A stretch of 64,000 nt of DNA from positions 256,542-320,541 of the IMG/VR virus record IMGVR_UViG_3300011113_000640. One strand, 5' to 3'. The position numbers were made by a program, and so were the translations under genes. Positions 21,463 to 47,248 of the stretch are shown in pieces. Position 1 is the stretch's first letter. Each line of letters starts with the position of its first letter. Under the pieces are notes generated by a model, which saw only the letters and a program-made list of their open reading frames with translations, was not told where the DNA came from and searched no databases.

Positions 21463-21464
21463 GA

Positions 21465-21745: not shown

Positions 21746-21746
21746 G

Positions 21747-22261: not shown

Positions 22262-22263
22262 GA

Positions 22264-22455: not shown

Positions 22456-22459
22456 GTTT

Positions 22460-28945: not shown

Positions 28946-29701
28946 TTAGGATTTTTTAAACACAGGTATGGGCAACATCTTGTGCAGGCTACGGGCCCGG
29001 ATCCTGCGATACTGTAACAACAGGTTGCGATCTGCGTCATACGCAGGGTCAACGCCCTGTTCATCCCAGGACATGGCACGCTCTAACTGTGCATAAGTGA
29101 GTCCGCCCAGCTGATCTTGATCAGTGCGACCGTCGGACCAAAGTCCATCTGTGGGTGCTGCATCAATGATATCTTGTATGATACCCAGTTCTCGTCCTAG
29201 ATCCCACACTTCGGTTTTCATTAGGTCACCAATGGGACTGATGTCCACGCCACCATCGCCGTATTTGGTATAAAAGCCCACACCAAAGTCTTCGACACGA
29301 TTGCCGGTGCCCACCACGATGCCGTGATTGTGCTGTGCTATCTGATACAGTGTGGTCATTCTCAATCTGGCTCGACTGTTGGCCATGCCCAACAAGTTGT
29401 CGTACGGTCCTAGTGTGGTTTCAAACTGATCAAACACTGGCGTGAGATCCACTGTTTCGTGTTTGACATTGCTGAAGTTTTCGGTGAGCCAAGCACCGTG
29501 TCTCAGGCTGAGATCATGCAGTTCGGGCCGTTGTCGTATGGGCATGGTCACTGCCGTGACTGGCATGCCAGTTTTAGCACACAGGGTACTAACCACACTA
29601 GAATCTATGCCCCCACTGATACCCACTACCAACCACTCGATGTTGTTGTCGGCAGCGTAGTCTCGTATCCATGTCGATATGTCGTTTGCAAGTTGTTTCA
29701 T
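28946..29701 (-). CDS. nadE: NH3-dependent NAD+ synthetase
   Basis: GISGGIDS, ANSRARLRM, GFYTKYGDGGVD, APTDGL. Confidence 0.92.
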   Translation of the reverse strand: MKQLANDISTWIRDYAADNNIEWLVVGISGGIDSSVVSTLCAKTGMPVTAVTMPIRQRPELHDLSLRHGAWLTENFSNVKHETVDLTPVFDQFETTLGPYDNLLGMANSRARLRMTTLYQIAQHNHGIVVGTGNRVEDFGVGFYTKYGDGGVDISPIGDLMKTEVWDLGRELGIIQDIIDAAPTDGLWSDGRTDQDQLGGLTYAQLERAMSWDEQGVDPAYDADRNLLLQYRRIRARSLHKMLPIPVFKKS

Positions 29702-29705: not shown

Positions 29706-29939
29706 TTATTCCTTTAGTTGCCACATTAAATGCTCCTGACGAGCATGCCATTTGTATTCAATCACAGGTGTTCCTGGACCGGTCCAGGTAGCAATTCCAC
29801 GATAGGCCAAGGTTCCGGGCCATAGTCTACGTCCTGTGATCTCGCAGGTTTTGGGCCATACCACCCTGCACAGTTTCCACTCGGCCCGAATATAAAAACT
29901 GCCATTGGGGCGATTGATACGTTCTGGTATTGGACTCAT
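29706..29939 (-). CDS. Small hypothetical protein
   Basis: ATGA-coupled to the queE stop. Confidence 0.6.
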   Translation of the reverse strand: MSPIPERINRPNGSFYIRAEWKLCRVVWPKTCEITGRRLWPGTLAYRGIATWTGPGTPVIEYKWHARQEHLMWQLKE

Positions 29940-30811
29940 TTGCCCCAGCCGTTGCCCCACAGGTCCACATGCAATCTAGGACTGTAGTTCCAGCCCTGCG
30001 CACAACAGATGTCTGCTATGCGTAGTTTATTTTTATCGTAGGGTTCAACCACGCCACCCTGTGGCATCAAATAAATTGTGCCCTTAAATCCTGCACGGCG
30101 ATACGCATCCGTGGCACGTATGGCCTCCGCAATGTGCTCATCGGTTTCAACCACAAACTTCAAATAAGTGTGTCCGATGTCGGCATAGCTCATCACAACT
30201 TCGGGACGTATGGCTTCATCCCAAGACTCGCCAGAAGCCGACAACTTGGCACTGACACTAAATGTCAACGCTGACGGACCTTTCTTGCCCAATTTAGGAT
30301 TCAGGGTCCAGTCCAACAAAAAGTGTCGGAAGTCTTTGTGCAACTCTTGAGTACCATTGGTTTCAAAGGTGATGTTCTTCAAGTCCAACATTCTTGGATG
30401 GCTCAACAGTTCGCTGTAGGCACGTTGCCAGCCCAGCAAAGGCTCGCCGCCGGTAATTACCAAATGCACATCGTTGCCATTGTTCTGCATCCATGCATTG
30501 TTGGGTGTCAGTGCCAACATCTTATCCACAAGTTCTTCTGTGGTGTAGTTAGGACTGAGATGTTTGAATGCTGGATGCCACGATGCATAACTGTCACAAC
30601 CTGTTTCTACCAAGGGCAGATCATTGAATGTGGGATACATGTGAACAACTTCGGCCACATCGTCGGCACCTGTTGACTTTTCGCCTGGCTTGCATCCAAA
30701 ACCTGCACAGGTAAAGTTGCAACCATAGGTTCTCAAGAACACACTGGGCACCCCTACAAAACGACCTTCGCCTTGTAAGCTATAAAATACTTCAGATACT
30801 TTTATTTTCAT
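29936..30811 (-). CDS. queE: 7-carboxy-7-deazaguanine synthase (radical SAM)
   Basis: EVFYSLQGEG, FLRTYGCNFTC, ITGGEP, ETNGT, SPRLHVDLWG. Confidence 0.9.
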   Translation of the reverse strand: MKIKVSEVFYSLQGEGRFVGVPSVFLRTYGCNFTCAGFGCKPGEKSTGADDVAEVVHMYPTFNDLPLVETGCDSYASWHPAFKHLSPNYTTEELVDKMLALTPNNAWMQNNGNDVHLVITGGEPLLGWQRAYSELLSHPRMLDLKNITFETNGTQELHKDFRHFLLDWTLNPKLGKKGPSALTFSVSAKLSASGESWDEAIRPEVVMSYADIGHTYLKFVVETDEHIAEAIRATDAYRRAGFKGTIYLMPQGGVVEPYDKNKLRIADICCAQGWNYSPRLHVDLWGNGWGK

Positions 30812-31404
30812 TCACATCCTCTTGTGGCGTAATCTCTGGGGGCATGTTCATGCTTGCTGTGCATTTTAAATCCATTTTCTAACAACAAAGGAATGGCTGT
30901 GGCACACTTGCCACTCAATTGATTAGTGTCATAATTATAATAGGTATCATCCATAATTACAACCGATTGTTCATCTAAATAAGGCAAACAATATTCTAAT
31001 TGCAATCGATGTTCTTCTTGACAATTGGCATTGTTCATTGTTATTCCTCTTAGGGAATATTCTCTAATCTGTCGTCGAACCCAGGCAGGAATATCTACTG
31101 TATTATAAATCCAATCAAAGTTGTCCAAATATAAAACTTTGATTTTTTTATTTAGACCTGGCAAAGTGTTCTTGCACCAATCACTGCCGGAACTTGCCAC
31201 TACCCAATTGATTTCTGGATAATCCTGTTCTCTCTTACCGTGCTCAACATCAACAGAATAAAATTCTATATTGCGTTTTTTTGCCCACTCATACAACCAT
31301 ACAGAACTACCGTCACCATTCTCACTGCCAATTTCCAACACAATGTTGTTTTGATCAACAGTAAGAGTAGTGTTTTCTAATTTAGTATAAGGTTTGGTGC
31401 CCAC
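30808..31404 (-). CDS. Class I SAM methyltransferase-like protein (family member 1)
   Basis: VLEIGSENGDGS, LYLDNFDW, MDDT, GKCATAIP. Confidence 0.6.
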   Translation of the reverse strand: MGTKPYTKLENTTLTVDQNNIVLEIGSENGDGSSVWLYEWAKKRNIEFYSVDVEHGKREQDYPEINWVVASSGSDWCKNTLPGLNKKIKVLYLDNFDWIYNTVDIPAWVRRQIREYSLRGITMNNANCQEEHRLQLEYCLPYLDEQSVVIMDDTYYNYDTNQLSGKCATAIPLLLENGFKMHSKHEHAPRDYATRGCE

Positions 31405-31469: not shown

Positions 31470-32018
31470 TTATCTTTGCCACCATGACTCCCAAGGAAAT
31501 ACAATCCAAACGTCTTCTTCGGCTTTGTTTATTGTGATAGCCGAATATGCGACATCTAGTTTACTTTTACTGCTTTCATTGTCATACAAGCAGGCCACAC
31601 GCACATTGTTGCCCCAGACTCCAGACCAGCGTTCGTGTTCAGGAAGACACCCACTGATCCAATCTTGTTGTATCCAGTTGAGTGTGGCACCGGTGTCGTT
31701 GATATCATCTACTATCAAGATATTTTTGGCATGCAAGGCAAAATCAAACTCGGCTAATAAACGTTCTTCTTTGGGCATATAACCAAAAGCATCTTCGGCC
31801 ATCCACAAGTTGCTTTCTTGTTCGGCACCATCACGTAGACTTACTTTCAGTGTTTCCATTCTGCACTCTAGATACTGGCTGATTAAATTTGCTGGAACCA
31901 GGCCGCCGCGGGTGAGACCAACCACATAGTCAGGCCTCCATCTGTCCAAGTTAATTTGACGCAGGATTTCCTGTGTTTGACGCTCAACGTCCTGCCAAGT
32001 ATGATAGATTTTTTTCAT
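31470..32018 (-). CDS. Type I phosphoribosyltransferase (purine PRT-like)
   Basis: VVGLTRGG, ILIVDDINDTGAT PRPP loop, WIVFPWE. Confidence 0.85.
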   Translation of the reverse strand: MKKIYHTWQDVERQTQEILRQINLDRWRPDYVVGLTRGGLVPANLISQYLECRMETLKVSLRDGAEQESNLWMAEDAFGYMPKEERLLAEFDFALHAKNILIVDDINDTGATLNWIQQDWISGCLPEHERWSGVWGNNVRVACLYDNESSKSKLDVAYSAITINKAEEDVWIVFPWESWWQR

Positions 32019-32053: not shown

Positions 32054-32992
32054 TTAACGTGTGAGCCATTTGGGATTGTCTTGATACCATTCAACTGTTT
32101 CGGTCAGACGTTGTTCAAATGATCTGGGTGCTTGCCATCCTAAACTGTACAATTTTTCCGGATTCACACTGAAACACAAGTCGTGTCCAGGACGATCAAC
32201 TGGAACTAAACGATAAGATAATTCGCAACCCATTATCTGGGCAATGTGTTGGGCAAACTCAAGATTGTTGATAAACTTGTTGCCGGCACTGTTCCATTTT
32301 TCACAACGAGCGGACTGTGTTTCTAATATAAATCTAGTATGGCTGGCCACATCGCCGGCATAGAACCAACGACGTCCGCCAATCAATTCACTAGGCCCTA
32401 CGTGTATGTCCAAGGTTTCATTGTTGAGTACTTTGCGTATGATAATCACCGGCAAGCGATTGCTTTGACAACGTGGACCAAAGGTATTGTTGATGTGTAT
32501 GATGCTGGCAGGAACAGCAAACGAGTTGGCATAGGCCAGACACAATTCTTCACCAGCGGCTTTGCCGGCCGCATAAGGGCTATTGCTGTTGTAGGCATCT
32601 GTGAGTTGGCTGTCTTGACCAATGGTCACGGGTCCGTAAACTTCGCCCGAACTGTAATACATGAATCGTTGCGTGCCAGTGTGTCGGGCATGTTCCAGCA
32701 GATTCAGTGTGCCCAACACATTGTCCATGATGGATGCGGTCGGGTTACTAAGACTGTCAGCAGCACTGGGATTGGCACCAGCATGCAGTATGATATCAGC
32801 GGCCGGCAGACCCGTACAAGGGTTTTTGATATCGTGTTCGATGATTTCGACGCTGTCAATCAAGTGTTGTAGCCGATCCATGTTGGTGGTTCCTGGACGC
32901 ACCACGCATATCACACGATGATCTCTGACAAATTCTTCCGCCAGGTAATGACCGATGAATCCATTGGCCCCGGTGATCAATACTGTTTTCAT
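32054..32992 (-). CDS. NAD-dependent epimerase/dehydratase (4,6-dehydratase-like)
   Basis: TGANGFIG, SPYAAGK, RPGHD; start MKTVLIT. Confidence 0.88.
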   Translation of the reverse strand: MKTVLITGANGFIGHYLAEEFVRDHRVICVVRPGTTNMDRLQHLIDSVEIIEHDIKNPCTGLPAADIILHAGANPSAADSLSNPTASIMDNVLGTLNLLEHARHTGTQRFMYYSSGEVYGPVTIGQDSQLTDAYNSNSPYAAGKAAGEELCLAYANSFAVPASIIHINNTFGPRCQSNRLPVIIIRKVLNNETLDIHVGPSELIGGRRWFYAGDVASHTRFILETQSARCEKWNSAGNKFINNLEFAQHIAQIMGCELSYRLVPVDRPGHDLCFSVNPEKLYSLGWQAPRSFEQRLTETVEWYQDNPKWLTR

Positions 32993-33672
32993 TGTGTCCA
33001 CTTGTATATGATATCGGTGTCTTTGACTAGCACTTTTTCGTATTCCAACTCTGCGAAAAAGACATCCATCATGTCTTGGCTTATGCCATATCTTTTGGCC
33101 CAGGGTTCGCACCATTCAATCATGACGACGGGATGGAACTTTTCAATGGTGTTTTTGGCTCCCATCAAGGCAAAATATTCATAGCCTTCAATATCCAATT
33201 GTATAAGATCACAGGCCGGCAAGTTTATTTCATCAATGATCACAGTGGGCACATTGCCGGCCTGTGTGCCCACATGGATGGCACCTGCATCTTGACCGCG
33301 ATTTATTTCAACAAACTTGTGTTCGTTGCCCACGCAGGCCTGTGTTTTTATCACATTGGAGTCGCAATTCAAGGTCAGGCACATGAAATTCATTGGATCC
33401 GGTTCAAAAGTGTACACCGTACCAAATCTTTTGCTGAACTGGCGCACAAGTTGGCCACAGTTACCACCGGCCTGCACCATCACACCAGGAGAATCCACAT
33501 GGGTCATCAGCAGGTCAAGAAATTCTGGTTCTATGCGGTACTGGTGCATGTAATTCCAACAGGCCCGGTCGTAACGAGGCCACCACAGATCTTTTAGTTC
33601 GACATGCGGCGAATCGTGTCTGAGCTCGATTAATTCACCCAGATTACCAGGAATGGTTTTATAATCGTCCAT
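32989..33672 (-). CDS. FkbM family methyltransferase
   Basis: QAGGNCG, YTFEPD, LIQLDIEGYE. Confidence 0.88.
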   Translation of the reverse strand: MDDYKTIPGNLGELIELRHDSPHVELKDLWWPRYDRACWNYMHQYRIEPEFLDLLMTHVDSPGVMVQAGGNCGQLVRQFSKRFGTVYTFEPDPMNFMCLTLNCDSNVIKTQACVGNEHKFVEINRGQDAGAIHVGTQAGNVPTVIIDEINLPACDLIQLDIEGYEYFALMGAKNTIEKFHPVVMIEWCEPWAKRYGISQDMMDVFFAELEYEKVLVKDTDIIYKWTQ

Positions 33673-34151
33673 CAGGTCCTTCGCACATTCAAATAAGCTG
33701 GTTGATTGCTGTACAAAAATTCACTCCAAACAGATTCTAATTCTTCAACAGTGTTAGGCTGATAAATTTTGATGTTAGGGAACACTTCAACAGCACGAAC
33801 AGCATCTTCGGCCCAGTGACTGAAACCCAAATGACCATAGTCCTGATCACGGCCGACTCCTACCAGTTTGACCGGTGCAAGTTCATGATCAAGATAGTTG
33901 CGTAGCCACTCATAAGGGCGGAAGATCACAAACGGAGTAATGCTGTAACACACAGGTATCTTGCCGCAATGAGTAAGTCCTACAGCAGTTCCCAGCATGA
34001 GTTGTTCTGCAGCACCTACATTAAGAGCACGGTCTGGTGCTACTTCTCTTGATCGATTAAGCACACCAAACCCAAGATCACCTGATAACAACCATACATC
34101 GGGATCTTTGGCCAATGAGTCAGCCATGAGTTCACCAAATCTATTTCTCAT
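33672..34151 (-). CDS. Transketolase-like protein, pyrimidine-binding subunit
   Basis: LSGDLG, NVGAAEQ, FSH motif. Confidence 0.85.
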   Translation of the reverse strand: MRNRFGELMADSLAKDPDVWLLSGDLGFGVLNRSREVAPDRALNVGAAEQLMLGTAVGLTHCGKIPVCYSITPFVIFRPYEWLRNYLDHELAPVKLVGVGRDQDYGHLGFSHWAEDAVRAVEVFPNIKIYQPNTVEELESVWSEFLYSNQPAYLNVRRT

Positions 34152-34756
34152 AGTTGCTCTAGATCCTCGGGTTTGAGCACATAGTAGTGCGTGAGTATGC
34201 CCTTGGCAAACGACCAATCCGGTGGCGCAGTTTCACGTATGTTGATTCTTGGCAAAAATGCCCGCAACCTACGGATGATATATTCTTTGTCGATAAAGTC
34301 ATAGGCAATCATGCCATTGACATTGACGTATACTTCTAAATTGTCTAACTTGGCTTCGTAGATAAAACGTAATGCTTCCCATATACTTCCTTCACCACAC
34401 TCACCGTCACTGATCAAACAATGCACTCGACGAGTACGATCAGCCAGAGCATATCCACAAGCCACAGTAAGGCCCATGCCTAAACTACCAGAGCTACAAG
34501 GCAGTCCGTCTTCGATGTTTCTGTGTGGATGGACTCCGTGTTTGTGAAATAAGTGTTCAGCATCTTTGCCAAGATATTTTTCTAAAATCACGTACCAAGC
34601 CAGGGCCGCGTGACCAGAACTTAAGATAAACGGTTCGTTGGGTTGTCGATTTTTGTAAATTTCTTCAATGATATTGACAGCATTAAGATTGGAACTTAGA
34701 TGTCCAATCTTTTCTCGATAGCTGATATCAATGATTCTTTGTTCAACGTCGTTCAT
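34148..34756 (-). CDS. Transketolase-like protein, N-terminal TPP-binding subunit
   Basis: GHLSS, LSSGHA, GSLGMG, SDGECGEGSIWE...N TPP motif. Confidence 0.88.
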   Translation of the reverse strand: MNDVEQRIIDISYREKIGHLSSNLNAVNIIEEIYKNRQPNEPFILSSGHAALAWYVILEKYLGKDAEHLFHKHGVHPHRNIEDGLPCSSGSLGMGLTVACGYALADRTRRVHCLISDGECGEGSIWEALRFIYEAKLDNLEVYVNVNGMIAYDFIDKEYIIRRLRAFLPRINIRETAPPDWSFAKGILTHYYVLKPEDLEQL

Positions 34757-36072
34757 AGATATAAACTCATAAATCCATCAACCTTTTCTCCAATGTACTC
34801 AATCTGTTCAGGAGTAATAACTGGACTGCATCCATGGAAGTAGGTATTCTTCATTGTGAATGTGGCCACAGGATAATTGTCACGTGCTGCCACAGGATCC
34901 ATCAAATGACTATACGCAGGTTGCAACATGATGTTGCCAGCAAAGTATGGGCGTGTCTGTATCAAGTTTTCTTCAAGATAATCAACAATGTCCATGCGTG
35001 AGAACGGAGCATCCGCACGTATGGTCAATGGGAAAGCAAACCAACTGACATCGGCTTTGTCTCTGGCACGTGGCAAGTGGAAAAACTGTTCATACTTTTC
35101 ATAGATGGCAAACAATAGATTGTAGTTGCGTTGACGTAAAGCATGTATCTCTGGCAATTTTTTAAGTTGCTCAAGTCCCATGGCTGCTTGTAGTTCAATG
35201 GGTTTTAAGTTATAACCAATTTCATCATACACATACTTGTGATCAAAAATCTGATCTGGCATTTCTGGTATCCACTCATTGAATCGCTTGCCACAGGTGC
35301 CACATTTTAATTTGTTGGCCTCGGGTCCTACGCAATAGCAACCGCGTCCCCACTCACGCAGGCTACGCACAATGATTTCTTGTTGTGGATCATTCATGGC
35401 CACAAAGCCACCTTCGCCCATGGTCATGTGATGTGCCGGATAAAAACTGCATGACGCCATTTCACCAAAGCTACCTAACGGCTTGCCGTCATAGGTTGTG
35501 CCTAGTCCATCACAGCAGTCTTCAAGCAGAACAAGATTGTACTTGTTAACTAGTTCCATAACCCGGTCCATATTAGGTGGATTGCCTAAAACATGAGCAA
35601 AGGTAATAATCTTAATATCTGTATCTGCCGCAAGCAAACGCTCTGCATGGTCCAAATCAATGTTTAGTGTATCAATTTCAATATCACAGAACACTGGCGT
35701 AAATCCATTTTGCAAGGTTGGATTCAGTGTGGTTGGAAATCCTGCGATTGGCATCAGTACTTTGGTGCCGGGTGGAAAATTATGTCCACGCTTGCTTTTC
35801 ATGGCGGTCATCATCAAGAGATTTGCGCTACTACCACTGTTGGTAAGCACGCCGCGTGTCTTGCCAAACTCCCTAGGAAATTTTTGTTCAAAGCGCAGGC
35901 TTTTGTTGCCCATGACCAGCCACCCATTAAGCAAGGCTTCTGCGGCCGCCACATACTCGTCGGATGAAAAATGCGGGCCAGCATAATTAACAAAGTCTTT
36001 GCCGGCCACCCAGGTTTTGTCTGCCTGTTTGGCGTCAATGTACTGTTTAATCAAGTTTAAAATTTCATTCAT
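34753..36072 (-). CDS. rfbH: CDP-4-keto-6-deoxy-D-glucose 3-dehydratase (RfbH/DdhC-like)
   Basis: NSGSSANLL, SFYPAHHMTMGEGG, EWGRGCYC, HKYVYDEIGYNLK, TRPYFAGN. Confidence 0.88.
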   Translation of the reverse strand: MNEILNLIKQYIDAKQADKTWVAGKDFVNYAGPHFSSDEYVAAAEALLNGWLVMGNKSLRFEQKFPREFGKTRGVLTNSGSSANLLMMTAMKSKRGHNFPPGTKVLMPIAGFPTTLNPTLQNGFTPVFCDIEIDTLNIDLDHAERLLAADTDIKIITFAHVLGNPPNMDRVMELVNKYNLVLLEDCCDGLGTTYDGKPLGSFGEMASCSFYPAHHMTMGEGGFVAMNDPQQEIIVRSLREWGRGCYCVGPEANKLKCGTCGKRFNEWIPEMPDQIFDHKYVYDEIGYNLKPIELQAAMGLEQLKKLPEIHALRQRNYNLLFAIYEKYEQFFHLPRARDKADVSWFAFPLTIRADAPFSRMDIVDYLEENLIQTRPYFAGNIMLQPAYSHLMDPVAARDNYPVATFTMKNTYFHGCSPVITPEQIEYIGEKVDGFMSLYL

Positions 36073-36799
36073 AGTCGACTCCGAGTTCTTGGCAAAGCAC
36101 TTTCATGATTTCAATGACTTTCAAGCTACCTCGACTGGCAGCAAAATGCAAAATGTTTGCATCGGCAATCGGCACTCCGGAATTCCAGAGTCTGGTAGCT
36201 TCTAGTTCAGCAGGATGGTCGCTTCTTAAGTTATGACACATGTAATTCATTTCTGGGTGTAGTCGATCTGTTTCTGGAATATCTTGTGCCCAAAACATTG
36301 CGTTGTGTCTTAGTTGGTCAAATCCCCAGTGCCGATCCGGATGTGTTTCCCTTGCTTGAAAATACTTTTCACCCAGGTCCCAAATTTCTTTTGACATGGT
36401 ATGCGGATAATATTGCACGTCATCATTGAAATGATGTCGAAATTCTCTATGATTCCGCGGTTCTGTGTAGTTGAACAATCTGTATTCTTTGTAGCGGTCT
36501 CCAAACAAACTGGTGGGTCGTATCATAAAAGTATCAGCACCGGACCAAAAAACGTTGCAGGGTTCGCTGTCCCATAATGCTTTGATCTCGTTCCAGTTGG
36601 CCTCAGTACAGGTGTCGCTGTCGTCGGCAGGATCGGTCCATAACACAGCTTCGAAAGGCTCCAGACAAAATTTGCGAAATGAAGACAGCCTTATCTTGTA
36701 CATTTCACCATAGGCCTTGTACAGGTCTTGATTCTTTTCTATGTGCCAGCCATTACGGATAGGCCTTACTGAAGAAACCAAATAATTTTTAACTGTCAT
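36065..36799 (-). CDS. Hypothetical, possible nucleotide-diphospho-sugar transferase
   Basis: GADT and ILHF motifs, glycan-operon context. Confidence 0.45.
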   Translation of the reverse strand: MTVKNYLVSSVRPIRNGWHIEKNQDLYKAYGEMYKIRLSSFRKFCLEPFEAVLWTDPADDSDTCTEANWNEIKALWDSEPCNVFWSGADTFMIRPTSLFGDRYKEYRLFNYTEPRNHREFRHHFNDDVQYYPHTMSKEIWDLGEKYFQARETHPDRHWGFDQLRHNAMFWAQDIPETDRLHPEMNYMCHNLRSDHPAELEATRLWNSGVPIADANILHFAASRGSLKVIEIMKVLCQELGVDYE

Positions 36800-37419
36800 T
36801 TCGATCTGCCTAATATAGCACCGCTGTTGTGACGATGCCCTTCACTGTGTAATAGCCGATAACCTTCGGATAACAAATAAGGAATAGCCGCTGAACACTT
36901 GCCAATAAACACACCTTCATCTGGCTCGTACCAGGTGTCGTCGCATACAATAATACTATTATCGCACATCAATGGCATTAACCGAATAGCTTGTTTTAAG
37001 TGGGCTTGTTGACTATTTAGATTGGTCATTTCGATTCCCATTTTTTGTAAATAACGTTCTTTTTGTGCCGGCACAAAAGGTTTGGCTTTTCTATTGACCC
37101 AATAGTCCCAATCAAAATTATCTAAGTAAACTAAACTTACTCGAGACTCGGGTTCTAGATTTCTAAAATTGTCCAGAAAGTCTTCACCTTTGGCCTGTAT
37201 GACTCGAACATGATTGGGCATGTTCACAAATCTTTCTTTGAGGCCGTCGATTTGATCTTGGTCATAGTCTACAGCATAAAATCTTGTGGCACGGTCTTTG
37301 GCCAGGTCTGCAAAAAACTTGGTGCTGCCTTCGCCACGATCAACACCAATCTCAATCCAAACACCTGGATCAATTTGATGTATAAAATTTTCTACATTTC
37401 GATAGTATGTGCCCATCAA
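36796..37419 (-). CDS. Class I SAM methyltransferase-like protein (family member 2)
   Basis: WIEIGVDRGEGST, VYLDNFDW, VCDDTW. Confidence 0.65.
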   Translation of the reverse strand: MMGTYYRNVENFIHQIDPGVWIEIGVDRGEGSTKFFADLAKDRATRFYAVDYDQDQIDGLKERFVNMPNHVRVIQAKGEDFLDNFRNLEPESRVSLVYLDNFDWDYWVNRKAKPFVPAQKERYLQKMGIEMTNLNSQQAHLKQAIRLMPLMCDNSIIVCDDTWYEPDEGVFIGKCSAAIPYLLSEGYRLLHSEGHRHNSGAILGRSK

Positions 37420-38106
37420 TTAACTCGCTTTAGTAAATCTGCCTAATATAGCACCACTGTTTTGTCTATAGCCTTGATTGTTCAACACTTCATAACCGTG
37501 CAACAATAGGTAAGGTATCACAGCCGAACACTTGCCAACGAATACTCCTTCATTGGGATGGTACCAGGTATCGTCACACACTATGATACTTTTTTCAGTC
37601 ATCAACGGCATCAGTCTCATGGCCTGAAGCAAGTGGGCTTTTTGGCTGTTGATATTGGTCATCTCAGTGCCCATGTAGTCTCTATAGTGTTGCTTTTGTG
37701 CAGGTACAAAAGATTCTTCTTGACCGCCAACCCAATAGTCCCAGTCAAAGTTGTCAAGATACACCAACGAAAATTTCTCGCCAGGATTGTTGCGTGCGAA
37801 TTGTTCCAGAAAGTTTTCACCAAAAGCATGTACTAGTTCTACGTGATCTGGCAAAGGCCCTTCGGCTAATCGAAATTGTCCGTCGGCACCTAATACCGCT
37901 TGTCCTTGCGATGACAACACCGCACGAGCCCTTGCGATTTGATTTTCATCTGCGTCAACACCGTAAAACTTAACGCCTTTTGTTTTTGCTATGTCAGCAA
38001 AGAATTTAGTACTACCTTCTCCGCGGTCAACGCCAATCTCAACCCACGCACCAGAGGGATCGACTGCATCCATAAATCGTTCTACTTCTTTGTAATATGT
38101 TCCCAT
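37420..38106 (-). CDS. Class I SAM methyltransferase-like protein (family member 3, tandem paralogue)
   Basis: Same motifs as 36796-37419 with high local identity. Confidence 0.65.
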   Translation of the reverse strand: MGTYYKEVERFMDAVDPSGAWVEIGVDRGEGSTKFFADIAKTKGVKFYGVDADENQIARARAVLSSQGQAVLGADGQFRLAEGPLPDHVELVHAFGENFLEQFARNNPGEKFSLVYLDNFDWDYWVGGQEESFVPAQKQHYRDYMGTEMTNINSQKAHLLQAMRLMPLMTEKSIIVCDDTWYHPNEGVFVGKCSAVIPYLLLHGYEVLNNQGYRQNSGAILGRFTKAS

Positions 38107-38109
38107 AGA

Positions 38110-39060
38110 TCACCAAATAAAATTTAACATGTAATACTCTATAACTCTTTGTAATTCTTGATCAAAGTTGGCCAGGGGTTGCCACCCCAAGGCCTTGAGT
38201 TTAGAGTCATTGATTGCATAACGCACATCTTGGCCTTGTCGGTGGCTGCCAGTGATGTAATCTTCCCAACGATCTTCAGCTCCACCACCGGGATAGTAAT
38301 GCAACAGCTTTTTGATAACTTCCTTGTTGGGCATTTCTGCATTGCCTGAAATGTTATAAATTTCGTTGATGCTACCGTGATCGATCACAGTCATTACTGC
38401 ACGAGCAGTGTCTTCGACATGCAACCAAGTCCTCTGCGGCTCACCACGATCATGCAGGTCAATTTTCCTGCCTATTTTGAGATACTTGATTGACTTGGGG
38501 ATTAATTTTTCAACATATTGACCAATACCATAGTTGTTGGTAGGACGCACAATTACATATCGGATGCCATAGGTTCTTGCCCAGGCCAGGATCAACATGT
38601 CGGCCGCTGCCTTTGAAGCTGAATAAGGATTGCTGGGTTTCAGCAGATCAGTTTCGGCGTGGGCACCCGAATCGATATCACCATACACTTCGTCGGTTGA
38701 AAAATGCAACAATGTTGGTTGCTTTTGAACAGGCTGTTGTCGGATCAGTTCCAACAGACGGTGTACTCCGTTGATGTTACTGTGCAGGAATACCTCAGAA
38801 CTCATGATCGAATTGTCCACATGAGTTTCAGCTGCTGTGTTTATGATATAATCGCAGTCATACAGTCGGTCAAGATCATTGATGTCTTTGTGTATGAACT
38901 TAAATGTATCGTATTTTTGAAACTCACTTAGAAAATCAAAATTGCTGGCATAGGTACCTTTGTCCACACCAATCACATGCCATCCACGTGCCAGACATTG
39001 TCGTGTGACATGTACTCCTATGAATCCCAAACAACCTGTGACATATACAATTTTTTTCAT
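38110..39060 (-). CDS. rfbB: dTDP-glucose 4,6-dehydratase
   Basis: TGCLGFIG, AAETHVDNSI, STDEVYG, PSNPYSASK, LIPK. Confidence 0.9.
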   Translation of the reverse strand: MKKIVYVTGCLGFIGVHVTRQCLARGWHVIGVDKGTYASNFDFLSEFQKYDTFKFIHKDINDLDRLYDCDYIINTAAETHVDNSIMSSEVFLHSNINGVHRLLELIRQQPVQKQPTLLHFSTDEVYGDIDSGAHAETDLLKPSNPYSASKAAADMLILAWARTYGIRYVIVRPTNNYGIGQYVEKLIPKSIKYLKIGRKIDLHDRGEPQRTWLHVEDTARAVMTVIDHGSINEIYNISGNAEMPNKEVIKKLLHYYPGGGAEDRWEDYITGSHRQGQDVRYAINDSKLKALGWQPLANFDQELQRVIEYYMLNFIW

Positions 39061-39878
39061 TTCATCTTTATTTGGAATTGTCGCATCTGATTGTTTATAT
39101 CATTTTCTCTGAGTCGTTGCCAGGGATCTTGTTGTTGAGCTTTGACGGCATCCCAGAAAGTGGGATTCAGCCCCTGAGATTTAAGATAATCGTTGAGCTT
39201 GTCGCATTCTTTAAAGCGTTTGGTTGAGGTAGGAGGATAATGGAAGTCTTTGGGATTGCTGGGATTACCCTCTAATAGTTCTCGCTGTTTGTAGGTGGCA
39301 TCAAGATTATTGCCGGTAAGATCGGCTCGGTCATGCGTGACATGCACATCGATCCTTTGGTATATGTCCACACAATAAGCATTTTGACTCAACCAAGCAT
39401 CATTCATGCTATGCAGGCTGAGATGTCCTATAACATCCAGCCAGGCTCGAGGAACTATGGGAAATATGCTGTAGGGGTGATCATTGTGGGTATGCACCGC
39501 CAACAGTTTGAATTGTCCAGTGTACCGGCAAATTTCCGTATCCCAGGCTTCGCTGTCCATTACAGCATCGTCATTCCAGAAAAACACCCAATCTGCCGAA
39601 CTGGCCCGGGCCAAGGTGTTTACATAATCATGCAGTTGGCTGTAGCCCATGGGCTCAAATGTCATGGCAGTATAGTTCACTCCCATGTCATCCAGTCTGG
39701 GTTGCAACACAGTTTGGAAATGTTCAATGCCCACAGTGTCATCTGTGTCCAGGCCCAATAACACTTGTATGCTATCAAGATCCGCGGCCTTTTCTAACAG
39801 GCCAATTAGACTGCGTGTCAAGGCATTGGTGCGGCCTCGTGTGGGAAGTAATATTGCTATTTTATAGTCGTTTGCCAT
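39057..39878 (-). CDS. Glycosyltransferase, GT2-like
   Basis: LLPTRGR, FFWNDD. Confidence 0.75.
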   Translation of the reverse strand: MANDYKIAILLPTRGRTNALTRSLIGLLEKAADLDSIQVLLGLDTDDTVGIEHFQTVLQPRLDDMGVNYTAMTFEPMGYSQLHDYVNTLARASSADWVFFWNDDAVMDSEAWDTEICRYTGQFKLLAVHTHNDHPYSIFPIVPRAWLDVIGHLSLHSMNDAWLSQNAYCVDIYQRIDVHVTHDRADLTGNNLDATYKQRELLEGNPSNPKDFHYPPTSTKRFKECDKLNDYLKSQGLNPTFWDAVKAQQQDPWQRLRENDINNQMRQFQIKMK

Positions 39879-39920: not shown

Positions 39921-40370
39921 CTAACCTTCGTAGATGGCACTGTTGGCACCGTGTTCGGCACATTCTACACGCACACAGTAACAACGGTCATTGGTCTTTT
40001 TGCGGATTAGTTGATCAGCAAAGTTAAAAGCATGTTCGGCAAACTTCTCTGCACCCACTCCATTGAATATTCTAATCTCTACTAGGTCCAATGCTTGTAA
40101 TTCTTCAAACTTAGCCAAGTGTGGATCTCGTTTATCCAGGGCCAACTTGTGATCAAAATGATCTTCCAACCAGGCTTTTAGTTCTTTGAGTCCGCCAAAG
40201 TCCACTGCCCAGTTTTTATCGTCCAGACTGTCACAACCAAAAGTGAATGTGAACGCCAGACTGTAACCATGTAGCAAGTGACAGTGACTGTGATCAGCAT
40301 TGGGCTGTCTAAATACAGCACTCAAGCCAATGTTGTGCCCGTAGTGTTTTGTTGAATAATACTTTGCCAT
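39921..40370 (-). CDS. queD: 6-carboxytetrahydropterin synthase
   Basis: HCHLLHGY, VDFG, FDH, AEKFAE, VECAE. Confidence 0.88.
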   Translation of the reverse strand: MAKYYSTKHYGHNIGLSAVFRQPNADHSHCHLLHGYSLAFTFTFGCDSLDDKNWAVDFGGLKELKAWLEDHFDHKLALDKRDPHLAKFEELQALDLVEIRIFNGVGAEKFAEHAFNFADQLIRKKTNDRCYCVRVECAEHGANSAIYEG

Positions 40371-40388: not shown

Positions 40389-40417
40389 ATTATAGCATAG
40401 GCGGCAGAGTTTGTAAA
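40389..40417 (-). promoter_or_regulatory. Sigma70-like promoter for queD and the glycan operon
   Basis: TTTACA-17 bp-TATAAT. Confidence 0.65.
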
Positions 40418-40678: not shown

Positions 40679-40858
40679 TTAATCGTAGTAAACGTATCCT
40701 GATTGTTTATTAGTTATGTTTGCACCAGGTCGATCTATTTCTTTTGAGGGCTTGTCCCAAAGTCTAGCGCGACCTTCTCTCTGCTGTTGTTCGGTGTCGG
40801 GGTGCTGTTGTTTATACCGTGTTAACCATTGATCAAATTCGCTGATGTATTTTACCAT
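40679..40858 (-). CDS. DUF3460-like protein (not in ORF track)
   Basis: Read manually: MVKYISEFDQWLTRYKQQHPDTEQQQREGRARLWDK... Confidence 0.7.
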   Translation of the reverse strand: MVKYISEFDQWLTRYKQQHPDTEQQQREGRARLWDKPSKEIDRPGANITNKQSGYVYYD

Positions 40859-41223
40859 TTTTTGTAATTGCCTTTGCCGGGTATTGTATTACGGACACCG
40901 CCCACTGGATCTTCTACATCGCCCTTTTGACGTGGAATAAGATGTATGTGTGGATACATCACAGTTTGACCCGCTGCTTCTCCTGAATTATAACCAATGT
41001 TGAATGCATCGCATTCTCCTTCTGCAACCATGTGGATGCCGTCGGCTAGGGCATCTTCAAAGGCCCTGACTATCCAATTAGGATTGTCGTTGTCTTTGGG
41101 CACATACAATCTATGACCGGGTGTGCATGGATAGCGATCAAGATACACCATGGTCGTGGTTTTTTCATCTACCTGTTGGTCCCAGGGTGCTATGCCTGCC
41201 TTTTGTGCTTCGATCAATTTCAT
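40852..41223 (-). CDS. HIT family nucleotide hydrolase
   Basis: PCTPGH, AAGQTVMYPHIHLIPR. Confidence 0.9.
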   Translation of the reverse strand: MKLIEAQKAGIAPWDQQVDEKTTTMVYLDRYPCTPGHRLYVPKDNDNPNWIVRAFEDALADGIHMVAEGECDAFNIGYNSGEAAGQTVMYPHIHLIPRQKGDVEDPVGGVRNTIPGKGNYKKW

Positions 41224-41224
41224 T

Positions 41225-43711
41225 TTAGTCAAACCAGTATCTAATTTCGTGCATGACACGATAATGATTCAGCCCACTGGTAGCAGTGGTCATCGCGCTG
41301 AATCGATATTGTGTGTTTTTGTTTATCATGCTTGTGTATAAACCTCTGACATAAGGTGTGACCTGATTCTGTACCGACATCTTTTTATGAGTATACTGTA
41401 TGTTACCTTGATTGTCAATACTGGTCGGCAGTTTTGCTTCTACTGAACCACTTAACACTACAGGTTTGACACCACCATACAACCCAAAATGTCCTCCTCT
41501 CTTGACATCACCAAATCTATAACCAGTTTCTGCCCAGGCACCGGTCATGTTATTTACACGGGTGATCAATCCTGGATTGATGTTGGTAGACACGTGCATC
41601 AAGCTGGCCTGCGCACTAAATCCTCTGTGTCGGAAAGTTACCACATTATCCAAGATGCCAGAACTGTTTATGCTTCCCCAACTGCCACCAAACGCTATCC
41701 AAGGGTTGGCGTTGAGATTGGTGTACTGCACCCCATAGGTAAATTTGCCTTTGCTGTAGACCTTGGGCAGGCCCACGGTGTATTGCGTGGGTCGGTTCAA
41801 TCCCATCCCTGTGTTGTCTCTGCCGGCAAAATCGGTGCCAACTCGCATGCCGTTGACCGTGGTCAAAGCACCGTTGACAAGATATTCTGCATGGCTGGTC
41901 AGTTCATATTGATCATTGTGTTCGGTATTGAAACCAAATGCATTCATGCGGTTGACATTCATTACCGAAATGTTGCTGTTGTAGCCTCGGCCCAGTTGAT
42001 CCATGACCACAACTGATCCATCACCAAGATTGACTCCTGTCAAATATCCTGTTATGGGCTTGAGGCCGCTGAGGGTGGCCAAACTCAGTTGCCCTACTGG
42101 TTTGAATATGTCTTCTTCGCTGATCACAGCCACACCGTTGAAATAGGTTGCCGCGGTTCTGGCCAAAACTTCATTGGCCTGAGGCAAGGTCATGTATGGC
42201 CATTTTTGCAAAATAAGATTTACTGCACTCTGGGCAGTGGTCACTGTGGATGCGCCAAGTTCACTCATATACACAGCCAACTGGCGATCAGATCCATTCA
42301 TAAAGCTCACAGCTGTCAACAAATAAAGTTTGCCGCCTGGACCACGCATCACGTTGACAGTATTGCCCATGTTGTCGCCGTTTTGCATTTCTGCGGCCTG
42401 TTTGACAAAATCAGTCAATAATTTTTGGTGTGCTGCCACGTACTTGCCGTCGGAGCTCTTTAACAAAAATTGATGGCTGGTGTTATTGCCACTGAAATCG
42501 GCTCCGCTGACCAAGATATCTTCTTTGCCGTCGCCGTTGATATCAACAAATTTGGGCTTGTATGTTGAGTAGGTGTTGGTGTTATAGCCAACTAGCACGT
42601 CGTCAGTGACATCAGTGAAATTGCCGCTGCCGTTGTTTTTCAAAAACTGTATTTCACTGAATTTCGATGCACTGTGATTGGGTCTACTGAAAATCAACAC
42701 GTCGAGTTTGCTGTCGTCGTTGAAATCATAACTGACAGCTCGCACATTATGACTGCCACCAAAATTATTACTGGCCCATTTGGGCAGCTCAAACCTGGGT
42801 GTAGGCAAGGTGTGTAATACAGTGAACACCGCTTCGTTGGAAGCATTCAAAGACCAGGAGAACAGTTTGGTAGCGGCACTGCCCGCGGTCCACTGGTCAG
42901 TGGCTATGATTTGTCCTTGTCCATTGCCCAGAAAATCACCAATGGCCACAGCACTGGCTCCGCGTATAACAGGATTGGTCTGACTTTGAGTATGCACCGA
43001 GAAACTGCTGATGCGGTTGTTCAAGGCTATGGTTGTGTTGGTTCCATAGTCAGCAATAACAATGTCCTTGTAACCGTCGCCGTTGAGGTCTCCAACCGCA
43101 CTATCATGGCTCCAGATAGGAACAGTGGTCAGCGTCTGTCGTTCAAAACTTGTACCGTTATTACGGAAGAAGTATGCAGGACCATAGTGTTGCATGTCAG
43201 TACCAGGAGACACAAACAGATCATGGCGTCCAGTTTTAAAGAAGTCGTCGAGTTTGATGCTGGGTTCTGTGCCCAGGATCACATTGGTGTCATTGGGGAA
43301 CCATTGTGCGGTTTTGTCTACCAGTTGACCGTTGTTCCAACTAAACATGCTGAGCCTAAAACTGCCCCACTCTGGCACTGTGGCCGGCTGTGTCATTCTA
43401 CCTGCGATGAGCACATCATCTTTACCGGTACCGGTAAGATCTGCTGTAAATGTGTCAGCCACAGCCCAGGCATGTCCATTGTTGACTCCGGGTGCATTGA
43501 TCAAGGGATCAATTGTGGCTACCTTGACAGGTGTGGCATAGGGCACTTCAGTTCTGAGATAAGGATTTGATGATACCGGAGGAACCATAACTGGCGGAGC
43601 CATGTATGCAGTTCCTGGATTGCCAGCGCCTCCACCACCACCACCACCACCGCAACCGGTAATGACGATAACTGTGCCAAAAAGACAAGTCCAAAGCAGT
43701 TTGCGCCGCAT
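41225..43711 (-). CDS. Large lipoprotein with FG-GAP/VCBS repeats and beta-rich C-terminal domain
   Basis: Lipobox ITG-C plus Gly8 linker; repeats DLTGTGKDD, DLNGDGYKD, DFNDDSKLD, DINGDGKED. Confidence 0.8.
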   Translation of the reverse strand: MRRKLLWTCLFGTVIVITGCGGGGGGGGAGNPGTAYMAPPVMVPPVSSNPYLRTEVPYATPVKVATIDPLINAPGVNNGHAWAVADTFTADLTGTGKDDVLIAGRMTQPATVPEWGSFRLSMFSWNNGQLVDKTAQWFPNDTNVILGTEPSIKLDDFFKTGRHDLFVSPGTDMQHYGPAYFFRNNGTSFERQTLTTVPIWSHDSAVGDLNGDGYKDIVIADYGTNTTIALNNRISSFSVHTQSQTNPVIRGASAVAIGDFLGNGQGQIIATDQWTAGSAATKLFSWSLNASNEAVFTVLHTLPTPRFELPKWASNNFGGSHNVRAVSYDFNDDSKLDVLIFSRPNHSASKFSEIQFLKNNGSGNFTDVTDDVLVGYNTNTYSTYKPKFVDINGDGKEDILVSGADFSGNNTSHQFLLKSSDGKYVAAHQKLLTDFVKQAAEMQNGDNMGNTVNVMRGPGGKLYLLTAVSFMNGSDRQLAVYMSELGASTVTTAQSAVNLILQKWPYMTLPQANEVLARTAATYFNGVAVISEEDIFKPVGQLSLATLSGLKPITGYLTGVNLGDGSVVVMDQLGRGYNSNISVMNVNRMNAFGFNTEHNDQYELTSHAEYLVNGALTTVNGMRVGTDFAGRDNTGMGLNRPTQYTVGLPKVYSKGKFTYGVQYTNLNANPWIAFGGSWGSINSSGILDNVVTFRHRGFSAQASLMHVSTNINPGLITRVNNMTGAWAETGYRFGDVKRGGHFGLYGGVKPVVLSGSVEAKLPTSIDNQGNIQYTHKKMSVQNQVTPYVRGLYTSMINKNTQYRFSAMTTATSGLNHYRVMHEIRYWFD
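41390..41418 (-). promoter_or_regulatory. Internal sigma70 promoter inside the lipoprotein CDS
   Basis: TTGACA-17 bp-TATACT. Confidence 0.7.
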
Positions 43712-47245: not shown

Positions 47246-47248
47246 GTT

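What the first reader, a model, noticed from the sequence alone, without database searches (positions are those of the whole stretch)
32054..39878. Compact operon for a branched-chain 3,6-dideoxy sugar
Seen: GT2, RfbB, two methyltransferase-like paralogues, a putative transferase, RfbH, split transketolase-like subunits, FkbM methyltransferase and a second dehydratase/reductase. Established: RfbH-type 3-dehydratases plus a TPP-dependent enzyme build branched sugars such as yersiniose. Inference: the phage makes a rare methylated branched sugar for virion, host-surface or DNA decoration.
Basis: partly seen in the sequence, partly recalled or inferred. Interest (0 to 1): 0.6.

Follow-up and report, generated by a model that had tools for sequence, protein, structure and literature searches.

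The report
Phage operon for branched deoxysugar
A 320-kb freshwater jumbo phage carries a ten-gene operon that most likely builds and transfers a rare methylated, carbon-branched 3,6-dideoxy sugar, and related phages swap the branch-adding enzyme like a cassette, which points to a fast-evolving phage glycan whose target is still unknown.

Summary
Ten back-to-back minus-strand genes (32054-39878) encode a GT2-like transferase, a dTDP-glucose-type 4,6-dehydratase, two paralogous methyltransferases, a GT8/GT34-like transferase, an RfbH/E1-type 3-dehydrase, a minimal split transketolase-like ThDP enzyme (202 + 159 aa), an FkbM methyltransferase and an SDR. The SDR lacks the dehydratase Asp-Glu pair, so it is a reductase.

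The main new evidence is comparative. In 80 related viral loci the slot just downstream of RfbH holds a ThDP enzyme in 70 of 79 informative cases. It comes from three different superfamilies: 35 YerE/AHAS-type, 19 mini-transketolase, 16 E1 alpha/beta-type. These types alternate among phages whose RfbH is 88-97% identical. This supports C-4 branching of the RfbH product, as in yersiniose, and argues against a pentose-phosphate role.

The operon is not self-sufficient. The genome has no sugar nucleotidylyltransferase and no E3-type reductase, so host supply is inferred. The acceptor is unresolved: virion proteins are my best guess, then host envelope. DNA is disfavoured because the genome lacks a hydroxymethylase and DpdA.

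I rate it a new variant of a known kind. All evidence is computational.

The parts
40389..40417 (-). sigma-70-like promoter (TTTACA, 17 nt, TG-TATAAT; 11 of 12) followed by AGGAG and the QueD start; probable start of the transcription unit that runs into the sugar operon
   Evidence: consensus match only
39921..40370 (-). QueD-like 6-carboxytetrahydropterin synthase; first gene of the probable transcription unit, not part of the sugar chemistry
   Evidence: phrog_2389 E 2e-39; PF01242
39057..39878 (-). GT2-like GT-A glycosyltransferase (273 aa) with an NDD (DXD-type) motif
   Evidence: phrog_14945 E 9e-8; Atlas GT2 cluster score 0.99; AF2 pLDDT 87.6; Foldseek TarP 6h2n E 7e-10 and RmlT 8bz5; invariant N102-D103-D104
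38110..39060 (-). NDP-glucose 4,6-dehydratase, dTDP-glucose type (316 aa), with STDEVYG and YSASK catalytic motifs
   Evidence: TIGR01181 304 bits versus TIGR02622 70 bits; motifs
37420..38106 (-). Methyltransf_24-type SAM methyltransferase, paralogue 1 (228 aa)
   Evidence: PF13578 E 1e-5; 57% identical to the next gene
36796..37419 (-). Methyltransf_24-type SAM methyltransferase, paralogue 2 (206-207 aa)
   Evidence: PF13578 E 3e-7; a third paralogue at 30808-31404 is 34% identical
36065..36799 (-). retaining-type GT-A glycosyltransferase, GT8/GT34-like (244 aa); always directly upstream of RfbH in relatives
   Evidence: AF2 pLDDT 91; Foldseek glycogenin 8cvz E 8e-7 and PBCV-1 A64R 2p73 E 3e-5; viral GT8/GT34 folds; a GT34 gene holds the same slot in L049 and L085
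34753..36072 (-). RfbH/E1-type PMP- and [2Fe-2S]-dependent NDP-4-keto-6-deoxyglucose 3-dehydrase (439 aa)
   Evidence: NF011936 435.5 bits above the 423 cut-off; 3bcx E 2e-100, His in place of the Schiff-base Lys; H214, C186/187, C245, C247, C260 invariant in 79 phage homologues
34148..34756 (-). ThDP enzyme, PP-domain subunit (202 aa), transketolase/DXS-like, truncated; motifs GH, SSGH, HGVHP, SDGE..EGS..NVNG
   Evidence: PF13292 and PF00456; NF004559 75 bits; human TK 3mos E 1e-13 and split TK 6yak E 6e-12; invariant motif residues
33672..34151 (-). ThDP enzyme, Pyr-domain subunit (159 aa); cofactor-activating Glu kept (AAEQ); no transketolase C-terminal domain
   Evidence: PF02779 E 7e-16; 6yaj E 2e-13 with alignment; predicted complex with the PP subunit, ipSAE 0.89 versus best control 0.00
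32989..33672 (-). FkbM-family methyltransferase (227 aa)
   Evidence: PF05050 E 5e-13; TIGR01444 50.1 bits above 37.7
32054..32992 (-). extended SDR (312 aa), predicted ketoreductase; SSGEVYG and YAAGK, lacks the dehydratase Asp-Glu pair
   Evidence: PF01370 E 3e-38; motifs; gene call of 312 aa
32024..32053 (-). perfect sigma-70 consensus promoter (12 of 12) directly after the SDR stop; start of the next unit (PRTase, methyltransferase, QueE ...)
   Evidence: consensus match only

Best explanation
The operon is a glycan-tailoring module of a lytic, Atu_ph07-like jumbo phage. The steps below are inferred unless marked otherwise.

1. Host-made NDP-glucose (probably dTDP-glucose) is converted by the 4,6-dehydratase to NDP-4-keto-6-deoxyglucose.
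2. The RfbH/E1-type enzyme removes the 3-hydroxyl to give NDP-4-keto-3,6-dideoxyglucose. It uses PMP and a [2Fe-2S] cluster, with electrons from a host ferredoxin/flavodoxin system.
3. The two-subunit minimal transketolase-like ThDP enzyme adds a two-carbon unit to the C-4 carbonyl, creating a tertiary-alcohol branch. The branch is acetyl if the donor is pyruvate, or glycolyl if the donor is hydroxypyruvate or a ketose phosphate.
4. The 312-aa SDR reduces the side-chain carbonyl.
5. FkbM and the two Methyltransf_24 paralogues methylate the sugar.
6. The GT8/GT34-like and GT2-like transferases attach it to an acceptor.

Shown by sequence: the family assignments, the catalytic motifs, and the positional interchange of ThDP enzymes. 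Inferred: substrates, order of steps, donor and acceptor.

For the acceptor, my best guess is phage (virion) proteins (about 0.4), then host envelope glycans (about 0.3), another target or a soluble product (about 0.2), and DNA (about 0.1 or less).

The slot after RfbH is a recombination hotspot where phages exchange the branching enzyme and its partner reductase. This diversifies the glycan.
For: - Family and motif evidence for each enzyme.
- The TK-N/TK-C heterodimer is predicted at ipSAE 0.89 against a best control of 0.00. That mark was reached by 51 of 78 solved complexes and 2 of 108 mismatched pairs. The runs agree in 100% of contacts and partner pLDDT is 94. The interface covers the GSLG and post-SDG helices and the AEQ segment.
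- Of 79 informative related viral loci, 70 carry a ThDP enzyme directly downstream of RfbH: 35 TPP_enzyme_N/M/C (YerE/AHAS-type, fused or split), 19 mini-TK and 16 E1_dh plus Transket_pyr. Each comes with a reductase.
- The three types occur beside RfbH proteins that are 88-97% identical to the window's. They need at least 23 changes on the RfbH tree.
- The TK-type and E1-type PP subunits are not detectably similar.
- In another phage lineage the same set (GT34, RfbH, TK-N, TK-C, FkbM, SDR, RfbB) forms a compact unit with no Que genes nearby.
- Cellular homologues of the mini-TK pair lie beside SDRs. In L131 they lie inside a polysaccharide locus with FkbM, an RfbH-like gene, methyltransferase and GT2 genes.
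- The literature establishes YerE plus YerF branching of CDP-4-keto-3,6-dideoxyglucose. It also reports alpha-KADH-type and proposed split-TK-type branching of keto sugars (PMC12247030, PMC9306805, PMC4753412).
Against: - There is no biochemical evidence of any kind.
- No sugar-1-phosphate nucleotidylyltransferase (PF00483, PF12804) and no E3-like reductase (PF00175) exists in the 320-kb genome, which is about 93% complete. The first step and the electron supply therefore depend on an unknown host.
- The 4,6-dehydratase is of the dTDP type, whereas characterised E1 enzymes use CDP sugars.
- Ketone-accepting transketolases have never been shown in vitro (PMC12247030).
- The PP subunit is about 70-100 residues shorter than in known split transketolases, so activity is not assured.
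- The donor, branch identity, methylation sites and acceptor cannot be read from sequence.
- The change count on the RfbH tree comes from a quick tree of very similar sequences and may be inflated.
Confidence: 0.7

Rival explanations
1. The transketolase-like pair is an auxiliary metabolic gene that boosts pentose-phosphate flux, like cyanophage talC. On this view the operon makes only an unbranched 3,6-dideoxyhexose (abequose/paratose-like), with the SDR acting as the 4-ketoreductase.
For: - Best sequence matches are genuine transketolases and DXS.
- Some relatives have RfbH without any ThDP enzyme (9 of 79), so an unbranched product is viable in this phage family.
Against: - The transketolase C-terminal domain is absent and the PP domain is truncated (202 + 159 aa).
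- The Asp of the GEDG..H motif in 6yaj, which in transketolases contacts the acceptor's C2 hydroxyl (from my own knowledge), is Leu here (GHLGFSHW).
- The genes are translationally coupled inside the sugar operon.
- The same slot holds YerE/AHAS-type or E1-type ThDP enzymes in sister phages.
- Cellular homologues sit beside SDRs in polysaccharide loci, not beside pentose-phosphate genes.
Confidence: 0.07
2. Target variant: the sugar is added in the cytoplasm to host envelope glycans (O-antigen, capsule or glycoprotein precursors) early in infection. This would block superinfection, or stop progeny from adsorbing to debris.
For: - Host-type sigma-70 consensus promoters flank the operon, suggesting early expression.
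- The GT2-like enzyme's best fold matches are TarP (prophage-encoded), TarS and RmlT, which decorate cell-wall polymers.
- Cellular homologues of the module are in surface-polysaccharide loci.
- Cassette diversity resembles O-antigen locus diversity.
Against: - A crude hydropathy scan finds no ORF of at least 150 aa with more than 6 hydrophobic segments, so there is no Wzx/Wzy/WaaL-like protein.
- No Gtr-type genes were seen in the window.
- The phage appears lytic, so the benefit window is short.
- Fold matches among GT2 enzymes are generic.
Confidence: 0.3
3. Target variant: the sugar decorates phage DNA, or a 7-deazapurine made by the flanking FolE/QueD/QueE/PRTase genes, as an anti-restriction hypermodification.
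For: - In this phage family the operon sits between QueD and QueE and probably shares QueD's promoter.
- The region lies among replication genes: PolB and a 5'-3' exonuclease.
- A methyltransferase paralogue lies in the Que segment.
- Phage DNA glycosylation with diverse sugars is known; Pyle et al. 2024 is cited in PMC12619734.
Against: - There is no ThyA-type dCMP/dUMP hydroxymethylase, and ThyX is present.
- There is no DpdA/TGT and no true QueC.
- The same sugar module occurs in other phage lineages without any Que genes within 10 kb.
- No known DNA glycosyltransferase family was detected.
Confidence: 0.08

Closest known systems
Yersiniose A pathway of Yersinia pseudotuberculosis (DdhA-D, then YerE and YerF)
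   Same: A 4,6-dehydratase, then an E1/RfbH 3-dehydrase with His-for-Lys and a [2Fe-2S] motif, then a ThDP-dependent carboligase acting on the 4-keto-3,6-dideoxy sugar, then an NAD(P)H reductase. Sister phages carry a YerE/AHAS-type enzyme in exactly this slot (PMC12247030, PMC9306805).
   Different: - The ThDP enzyme here is a two-subunit transketolase/DXS-like protein, not a YerE-type flavoprotein.
- The dehydratase is dTDP-type rather than CDP-type.
- There is no cytidylyltransferase and no E3 reductase.
- Three methyltransferases are added.
- The module is encoded by a phage.
Split-gene transketolases proposed to branch keto sugars in miharamycin/amipurimycin biosynthesis
   Same: A split transketolase-family ThDP enzyme in a sugar-tailoring cluster, proposed to transfer a two-carbon (hydroxyacetyl) unit to a keto sugar (PMC12247030).
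   Different: - Those are in actinomycete secondary metabolism, act on a different sugar core and are untested in vitro.
- The phage subunits are much smaller (202 + 159 aa) and lack the C-terminal domain.
AviB1/AviB2 (avilamycin) and paulomycin E1 alpha/beta-like enzymes (alpha-KADH2 type)
   Same: A two-subunit ThDP enzyme that attaches a C2 branch at C-4 of a deoxysugar, followed by ketoreduction (PMC4753412). Sixteen sister phages carry a mini E1 alpha/beta pair at this position.
   Different: It is a different ThDP superfamily from the window's enzyme; the PP subunits show no detectable similarity.
Virus-encoded glycan machinery: PBCV-1 A64R, giant-virus sugar pathways, mycobacteriophage virion glycosylation, cyanophage sugar islands
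   Same: Virus-encoded GT-A transferases plus nucleotide-sugar tailoring genes. The 244-aa transferase folds like A64R and glycogenin. Cyanophage S-H68 carries an RfbH-like gene (40% identity) in a sugar island.
   Different: No deposited phage record carries the mini-TK pair above 35% identity. S-H68 has no ThDP enzyme. I found no report of a branched-sugar pathway in a phage.

Membership tests
E1 / RfbH (DdhC) NDP-4-keto-6-deoxyglucose 3-dehydrase | Scores above the curated family cut-off and aligns full-length to the solved E1 structure | tested here: met
   NF011936 435.5 bits against a 423 cut-off; 3bcx E 2e-100 over residues 3-437
E1 / RfbH (DdhC) NDP-4-keto-6-deoxyglucose 3-dehydrase | His replaces the PLP-binding Lys of aminotransferases | tested here: met
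   YPAHH aligns with E1 YPAHH; the H220K mutant entry 3bb8 shows the position. H214 is invariant in 79 phage homologues.
E1 / RfbH (DdhC) NDP-4-keto-6-deoxyglucose 3-dehydrase | Cysteine ligands of the [2Fe-2S] cluster (C..CxC..C motif) | tested here: met
   C186/C187, C245, C247 and C260 align with the E1 cysteines and are invariant. The last spacer is 4 residues longer.
Complete CDP-3,6-dideoxyhexose (ddh/asc) pathway | Glucose-1-phosphate nucleotidylyltransferase (DdhA/RfbF) | tested here: not met
   No PF00483 or PF12804 match in the whole 320-kb genome; controls were positive
Complete CDP-3,6-dideoxyhexose (ddh/asc) pathway | CDP-glucose 4,6-dehydratase (DdhB/RfbG) | tested here: inconclusive
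   A true 4,6-dehydratase is present (TDE, YxxxK), but it scores as dTDP-type: TIGR01181 304 bits versus TIGR02622 70 bits, both below their cut-offs.
Complete CDP-3,6-dideoxyhexose (ddh/asc) pathway | E3 (DdhD/AscD) flavin/[2Fe-2S] reductase | tested here: not met
   No PF00175 match. Only one sub-threshold Fer2 match far from the operon.
YerE-type branched-sugar pathway | ThDP-dependent carboligase encoded next to the 3-dehydrase | tested here: met
   TK-N starts at the RfbH stop. A ThDP enzyme fills this slot in 70 of 79 related loci.
YerE-type branched-sugar pathway | The carboligase belongs to the decarboxylase superfamily (TPP_enzyme_N/M/C) | tested here: not met
   The window's enzyme hits PF13292/PF00456 and PF02779 only. 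YerE-type enzymes occur in sister loci such as L041 and L062.
YerE-type branched-sugar pathway | Side-chain ketoreductase (YerF-like) | tested here: inconclusive
   An SDR lacking the dehydratase residues follows. Its substrate is not testable in silico.
Transketolase (EC 2.2.1.1) | PP domain with the ThDP/metal motif GDG-x(25-30)-N and catalytic histidines | tested here: met
   SDGE..EGS..NVNG, GH, SSGH and HGVHP are invariant in 11 homologues. The first Gly is Ser.
Transketolase (EC 2.2.1.1) | Pyr domain with the cofactor-activating Glu | tested here: met
   NVGAAEQ aligns with NMGIAEQ of split transketolase 6yaj
Transketolase (EC 2.2.1.1) | C-terminal domain (PF02780) and a full-length PP domain | tested here: not met
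   The subunits are 202 and 159 aa with no third domain. Solved split-TK subunits are 309 and 341 aa.
Transketolase (EC 2.2.1.1) | Acceptor-binding Asp of the GEDGxTHQ motif | tested here: not met
   The query has GHLGFSHW opposite GEDGASHQ of 6yaj. The role of this Asp is from my own knowledge of transketolases.
GT-A glycosyltransferases (GT2; GT8/GT34) | GT-A fold with a DXD-type motif | tested here: met
   Confident models, pLDDT 87.6 and 91.2. Best folds are TarP/RmlT for the 273-aa protein and glycogenin/A64R for the 244-aa protein. Invariant NDD and GAD(T)/D127 residues.

The most novel reading that the evidence does not exclude
The branched, methylated sugar is attached to a 7-deazapurine made by the flanking FolE/QueD/QueE/purine-PRTase genes. 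It would be attached either in the phage's DNA or as a nucleotide or nucleoside. That would be a glycosylated 7-deazaguanine hypermodification built at the nucleotide level without DpdA, and swapping the ThDP cassette would vary it to escape modification-dependent defences.
Probability: 0.06. Interest if true: 0.95.

Novelty: new variant of a known kind. Interest (0 to 1): 0.62.

Why it matters
- Branched 3,6-dideoxy sugars are known from bacterial O-antigens and antibiotics, not from viruses.
- The operon offers a minimal (361 aa in total) two-subunit transketolase-like enzyme as a candidate ketone-accepting ThDP carboligase. No such transketolase-type enzyme has been shown in vitro or solved structurally (PMC12247030).
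- A widespread freshwater jumbo-phage family exchanges three unrelated kinds of ThDP branching enzyme at one locus. That amounts to natural combinatorial biosynthesis and implies strong diversifying selection on a phage-made glycan.
- Finding the acceptor (virion, host surface or nucleic acid) would reveal a new layer of phage-host interaction in lakes.
- The loci are also a ready-made panel of enzymes for making tertiary-alcohol sugars.

Tried and rejected
- DNA searches of deposited phages found nothing similar to the operon or to the rest of the window.
- The PDB sequence search gave nothing for the 273-aa, 244-aa or Methyltransf_24 proteins, so the two transferases were folded instead.
- I considered that the first gene might be the missing nucleotidylyltransferase. 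I rejected this because its fold matches GT2 transferases.
- I considered the last SDR as a second 4,6-dehydratase. I rejected this on motifs.
- I considered the NadE-like gene as QueC. It passes the NadE cut-off and gives only a faint QueC match, so this stays open.
- I looked for RNA evidence. No RNA run holds the stretch, so expression and transcript ends are untested.
- One exact look-up for a distant locus (L039) found no record.

Full report
**Context.** The window is the last 64 kb of a single 320,541-bp IMG/VR virus contig, estimated about 93% complete. Its family-B DNA polymerase is 49% identical to that of Sinorhizobium phage Phosso and 45.5% identical to that of Agrobacterium phage Atu_ph07. 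This places it among Atu_ph07-like jumbo phages. A comparable 318-kb Lake Biwa genome has been described (bioRxiv 10.1101/655167). The window carries seven tRNAs and a permuted tmRNA. The tmRNA scores as the betaproteobacterial type, RF01850, at 129 bits. Near-identical DNA occurs in lake, river and other freshwater metagenomes from several studies.

**Observation.** Ten minus-strand ORFs fill 32054-39878 with overlapping or abutting ends.
- a dTDP-glucose-type 4,6-dehydratase (TIGR01181, 304 bits; STDEVYG and YSASK motifs);
- two Methyltransf_24 proteins that are 57% identical to each other;
- RfbH (NF011936, 435.5 bits against a cut-off of 423);
- a Transketolase_N/DXP_synthase_N protein of 202 aa and a Transket_pyr protein;
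- an FkbM methyltransferase;
- a second extended SDR.

Public gene calls set the Pyr subunit at 159 aa and the SDR at 312 aa. The two proteins without Pfam hits were modelled:
- The 273-aa protein (pLDDT 87.6) is a GT2-like GT-A enzyme. Its best matches are TarP, RmlT and TarS.
- The 244-aa protein (pLDDT 91.2) is a GT8/GT34-like GT-A enzyme resembling glycogenin and the chlorovirus capsid glycosyltransferase A64R.

The last SDR has SSGEVYG in place of the dehydratase's TDE motif. I therefore read it as a reductase, not a second dehydratase. Contigs from an independent study match 32611-37997 without a single difference and bridge the RfbH/TK-N and FkbM/SDR junctions. The arrangement is therefore real.

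**RfbH.** The protein aligns end to end with the solved Yersinia E1 dehydrase (E 2e-100). It has His where aminotransferases have the Schiff-base Lys, and it keeps the cysteines of the unusual [2Fe-2S] motif. These residues are invariant in 79 phage homologues. It is a genuine E1-type 3-dehydrase.

**The ThDP enzyme.**
- The PP subunit keeps the cofactor/metal motif (SDGE..EGS..NVNG) and the GH, SSGH and HGVHP histidines. All are invariant across homologues down to 61% identity.
- The Pyr subunit keeps the activating Glu (AAEQ).
- The pair is predicted to form a complex at ipSAE 0.89 against a best control of 0.00. That mark was reached by 51 of 78 solved complexes and 2 of 108 mismatched pairs. 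Contact agreement between runs is 100% and partner pLDDT is 94. Solved split transketolases exist, so this shows likeness rather than proof of binding.
- The enzyme lacks the third transketolase domain. Its PP subunit is 202 aa, against 309 aa in the solved split enzyme.
- It has Leu where transketolases have the acceptor-binding Asp.

It is thus a stripped-down transketolase/DXS-like carboligase with a changed acceptor site.

**Comparative evidence.** A scan of IMG/VR found 372 viral stretches encoding an RfbH relative, and the best 80 were fetched.
- RfbB and RfbH are the constant core. The other genes come and go.
- The slot directly downstream of RfbH holds a ThDP enzyme in 70 of 79 informative loci:
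 - 35 of the YerE/AHAS type (TPP_enzyme_N/M/C), either fused at 585 aa or split at about 335 + 246 aa, and often preceded by a class I/II aminotransferase;
 - 19 of the mini-transketolase type, as in the window;
 - 16 of a mini E1 alpha/beta type (E1_dh plus Transket_pyr).
- Each type travels with a reductase. The TK and split-AHAS types come with the 312-aa SDR and FkbM. The fused-AHAS and E1 types come with an RmlD-like protein of about 269 aa.
- The three types sit beside RfbH proteins 88-97% identical to the window's. They need at least 23 changes on an RfbH tree, against 36-43 for shuffled labels. That count comes from a quick tree of very similar sequences, so it is rough.
- The TK-type and E1-type PP subunits are not detectably similar.

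Interchange of three ThDP families at one position next to E1 is what one expects if all of them act on the E1 product. It is the strongest argument for C-4 branching.

In a different phage lineage the same set (GT34, RfbH, TK-N, TK-C, FkbM, SDR, RfbB) forms a compact unit with no queuosine-type genes nearby. Cellular homologues of the mini-TK pair (33-51% identity) occur in metagenome-assembled genomes of Patescibacteria, Omnitrophota and Gammaproteobacteria, in most loci with an SDR close upstream. In one gammaproteobacterial locus they lie among FkbM, SDR, RfbH-like, methyltransferase and GT2 genes.

**Comparison with what is known.**
- YerE plus YerF branch CDP-4-keto-3,6-dideoxyglucose to yersiniose.
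- AviB1/B2-type E1 alpha/beta enzymes branch antibiotic sugars.
- Split transketolases are only proposed, in miharamycin and amipurimycin biosynthesis, and have never been shown in vitro (PMC12247030, PMC9306805, PMC4753412).
- I found no paper linking yersiniose-type sugars to phages.
- Deposited phage genomes contain RfbH-like genes at about 40% identity in cyanophage sugar islands, but without a ThDP enzyme. They contain no mini-TK above 35% identity.

**What is missing.** The genome has no sugar-1-phosphate nucleotidylyltransferase and no E3-like reductase. NDP-glucose and reducing equivalents must therefore come from the host. From my own knowledge, SpnQ-type 3-dehydrases work with general ferredoxin or flavodoxin reductases.

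**Target.**
- There is no ThyA-type hydroxymethylase (ThyX is present) and no DpdA. The usual handles for DNA glycosylation are therefore absent.
- A crude hydropathy scan finds no ORF with more than six hydrophobic segments, so there is no Wzx/Wzy-like protein.
- Consensus sigma-70 promoters sit before QueD (11 of 12, with an extended -10 element and a Shine-Dalgarno sequence) and directly after the operon (12 of 12). This suggests early, host-polymerase transcription. These are pattern matches only.
- I rank the targets as virion or other phage proteins first, host envelope second, DNA last.

**Verdict.** The operon is a new variant of a known kind of pathway. Its interest lies in the phage setting, the minimal transketolase-type branching enzyme, and the cassette exchange.

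Noticed in passing
window 44409-45248, 39921-40370, 29936-30811, 31470-32018, 28946-29701, 40852-41259: FolE, QueD and QueE are present, but there is no true QueC and no DpdA/TGT anywhere in the genome. Beside them lie an XPRT/HGPRT-like phosphoribosyltransferase, a NadE that passes its cut-off, and a HIT protein. This could be a nucleotide-level 7-deazapurine route (toyocamycin-like) or NAD+ repair. The sugar operon splits this set in the loci of this phage family that span the region.
   Followed up: partly
window 45274-49431 and 27653-28888: There is a second group of sugar genes: GalE (TIGR01179, 301 bits against a 262 cut-off), a radical SAM/SPASM protein, a weak GT-B glycosyltransferase, a short DegT-like remnant (only Pfam positions 28-86) and an NDP-sugar dehydrogenase. 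The glycan investment is larger than the ten-gene operon.
   Followed up: partly
window 21439-21764; tRNAs at 13800-22534: A permuted tmRNA scores as the betaproteobacterial type (RF01850, 129 bits; tag ANAANDEVFALAA), alongside seven tRNA genes. Together with a TctC/Bug-family binding protein (56944-57966), this hints at a betaproteobacterial host. The similar Lake Biwa jumbo phage was predicted to infect LD12.
   Followed up: partly
L062:11317-12483 (also L002, L003, L008-L011, L013, L021, L022, L024, L030, L071-L073): In split-AHAS cassettes a class I/II aminotransferase (PF00155, E 6e-72) sits between RfbH and the ThDP enzyme. It may supply an unusual 2-oxo-acid donor or aminate the branch.
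   Followed up: no
window 41225-43711: An 828-aa FG-GAP/VCBS-repeat protein is conserved upstream of the locus in related phages but is only 36-67% identical between them. That is much more divergent than its neighbours, as expected of a host-interacting or surface protein. It has its own perfect sigma-70 consensus promoter at 43771-43743.
   Followed up: no
window 56944-61136: A TctC-family periplasmic binding protein, an AMP-binding (acyl-adenylate) enzyme, a hexapeptide acyltransferase and a radical SAM protein lie just beyond the DNA polymerase. Together they look like another small tailoring module of unknown role.
   Followed up: no
window 30808-31404: A third Methyltransf_24 paralogue, 34% identical to the operon's pair, sits between the PRTase and QueE. 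One methyltransferase family thus spans both the sugar segment and the 7-deazapurine segment.
   Followed up: partly
L018:6088-6894: The GT2-like gene homologue in this related contig contains an in-frame stop codon. This may be a pseudogene or a sequencing error.
   Followed up: no
G000:C1:135420-135755 (outside the window): Another GT2-family gene (PF00535, E 1e-6) lies elsewhere in the phage genome. Its neighbourhood was not examined.
   Followed up: no
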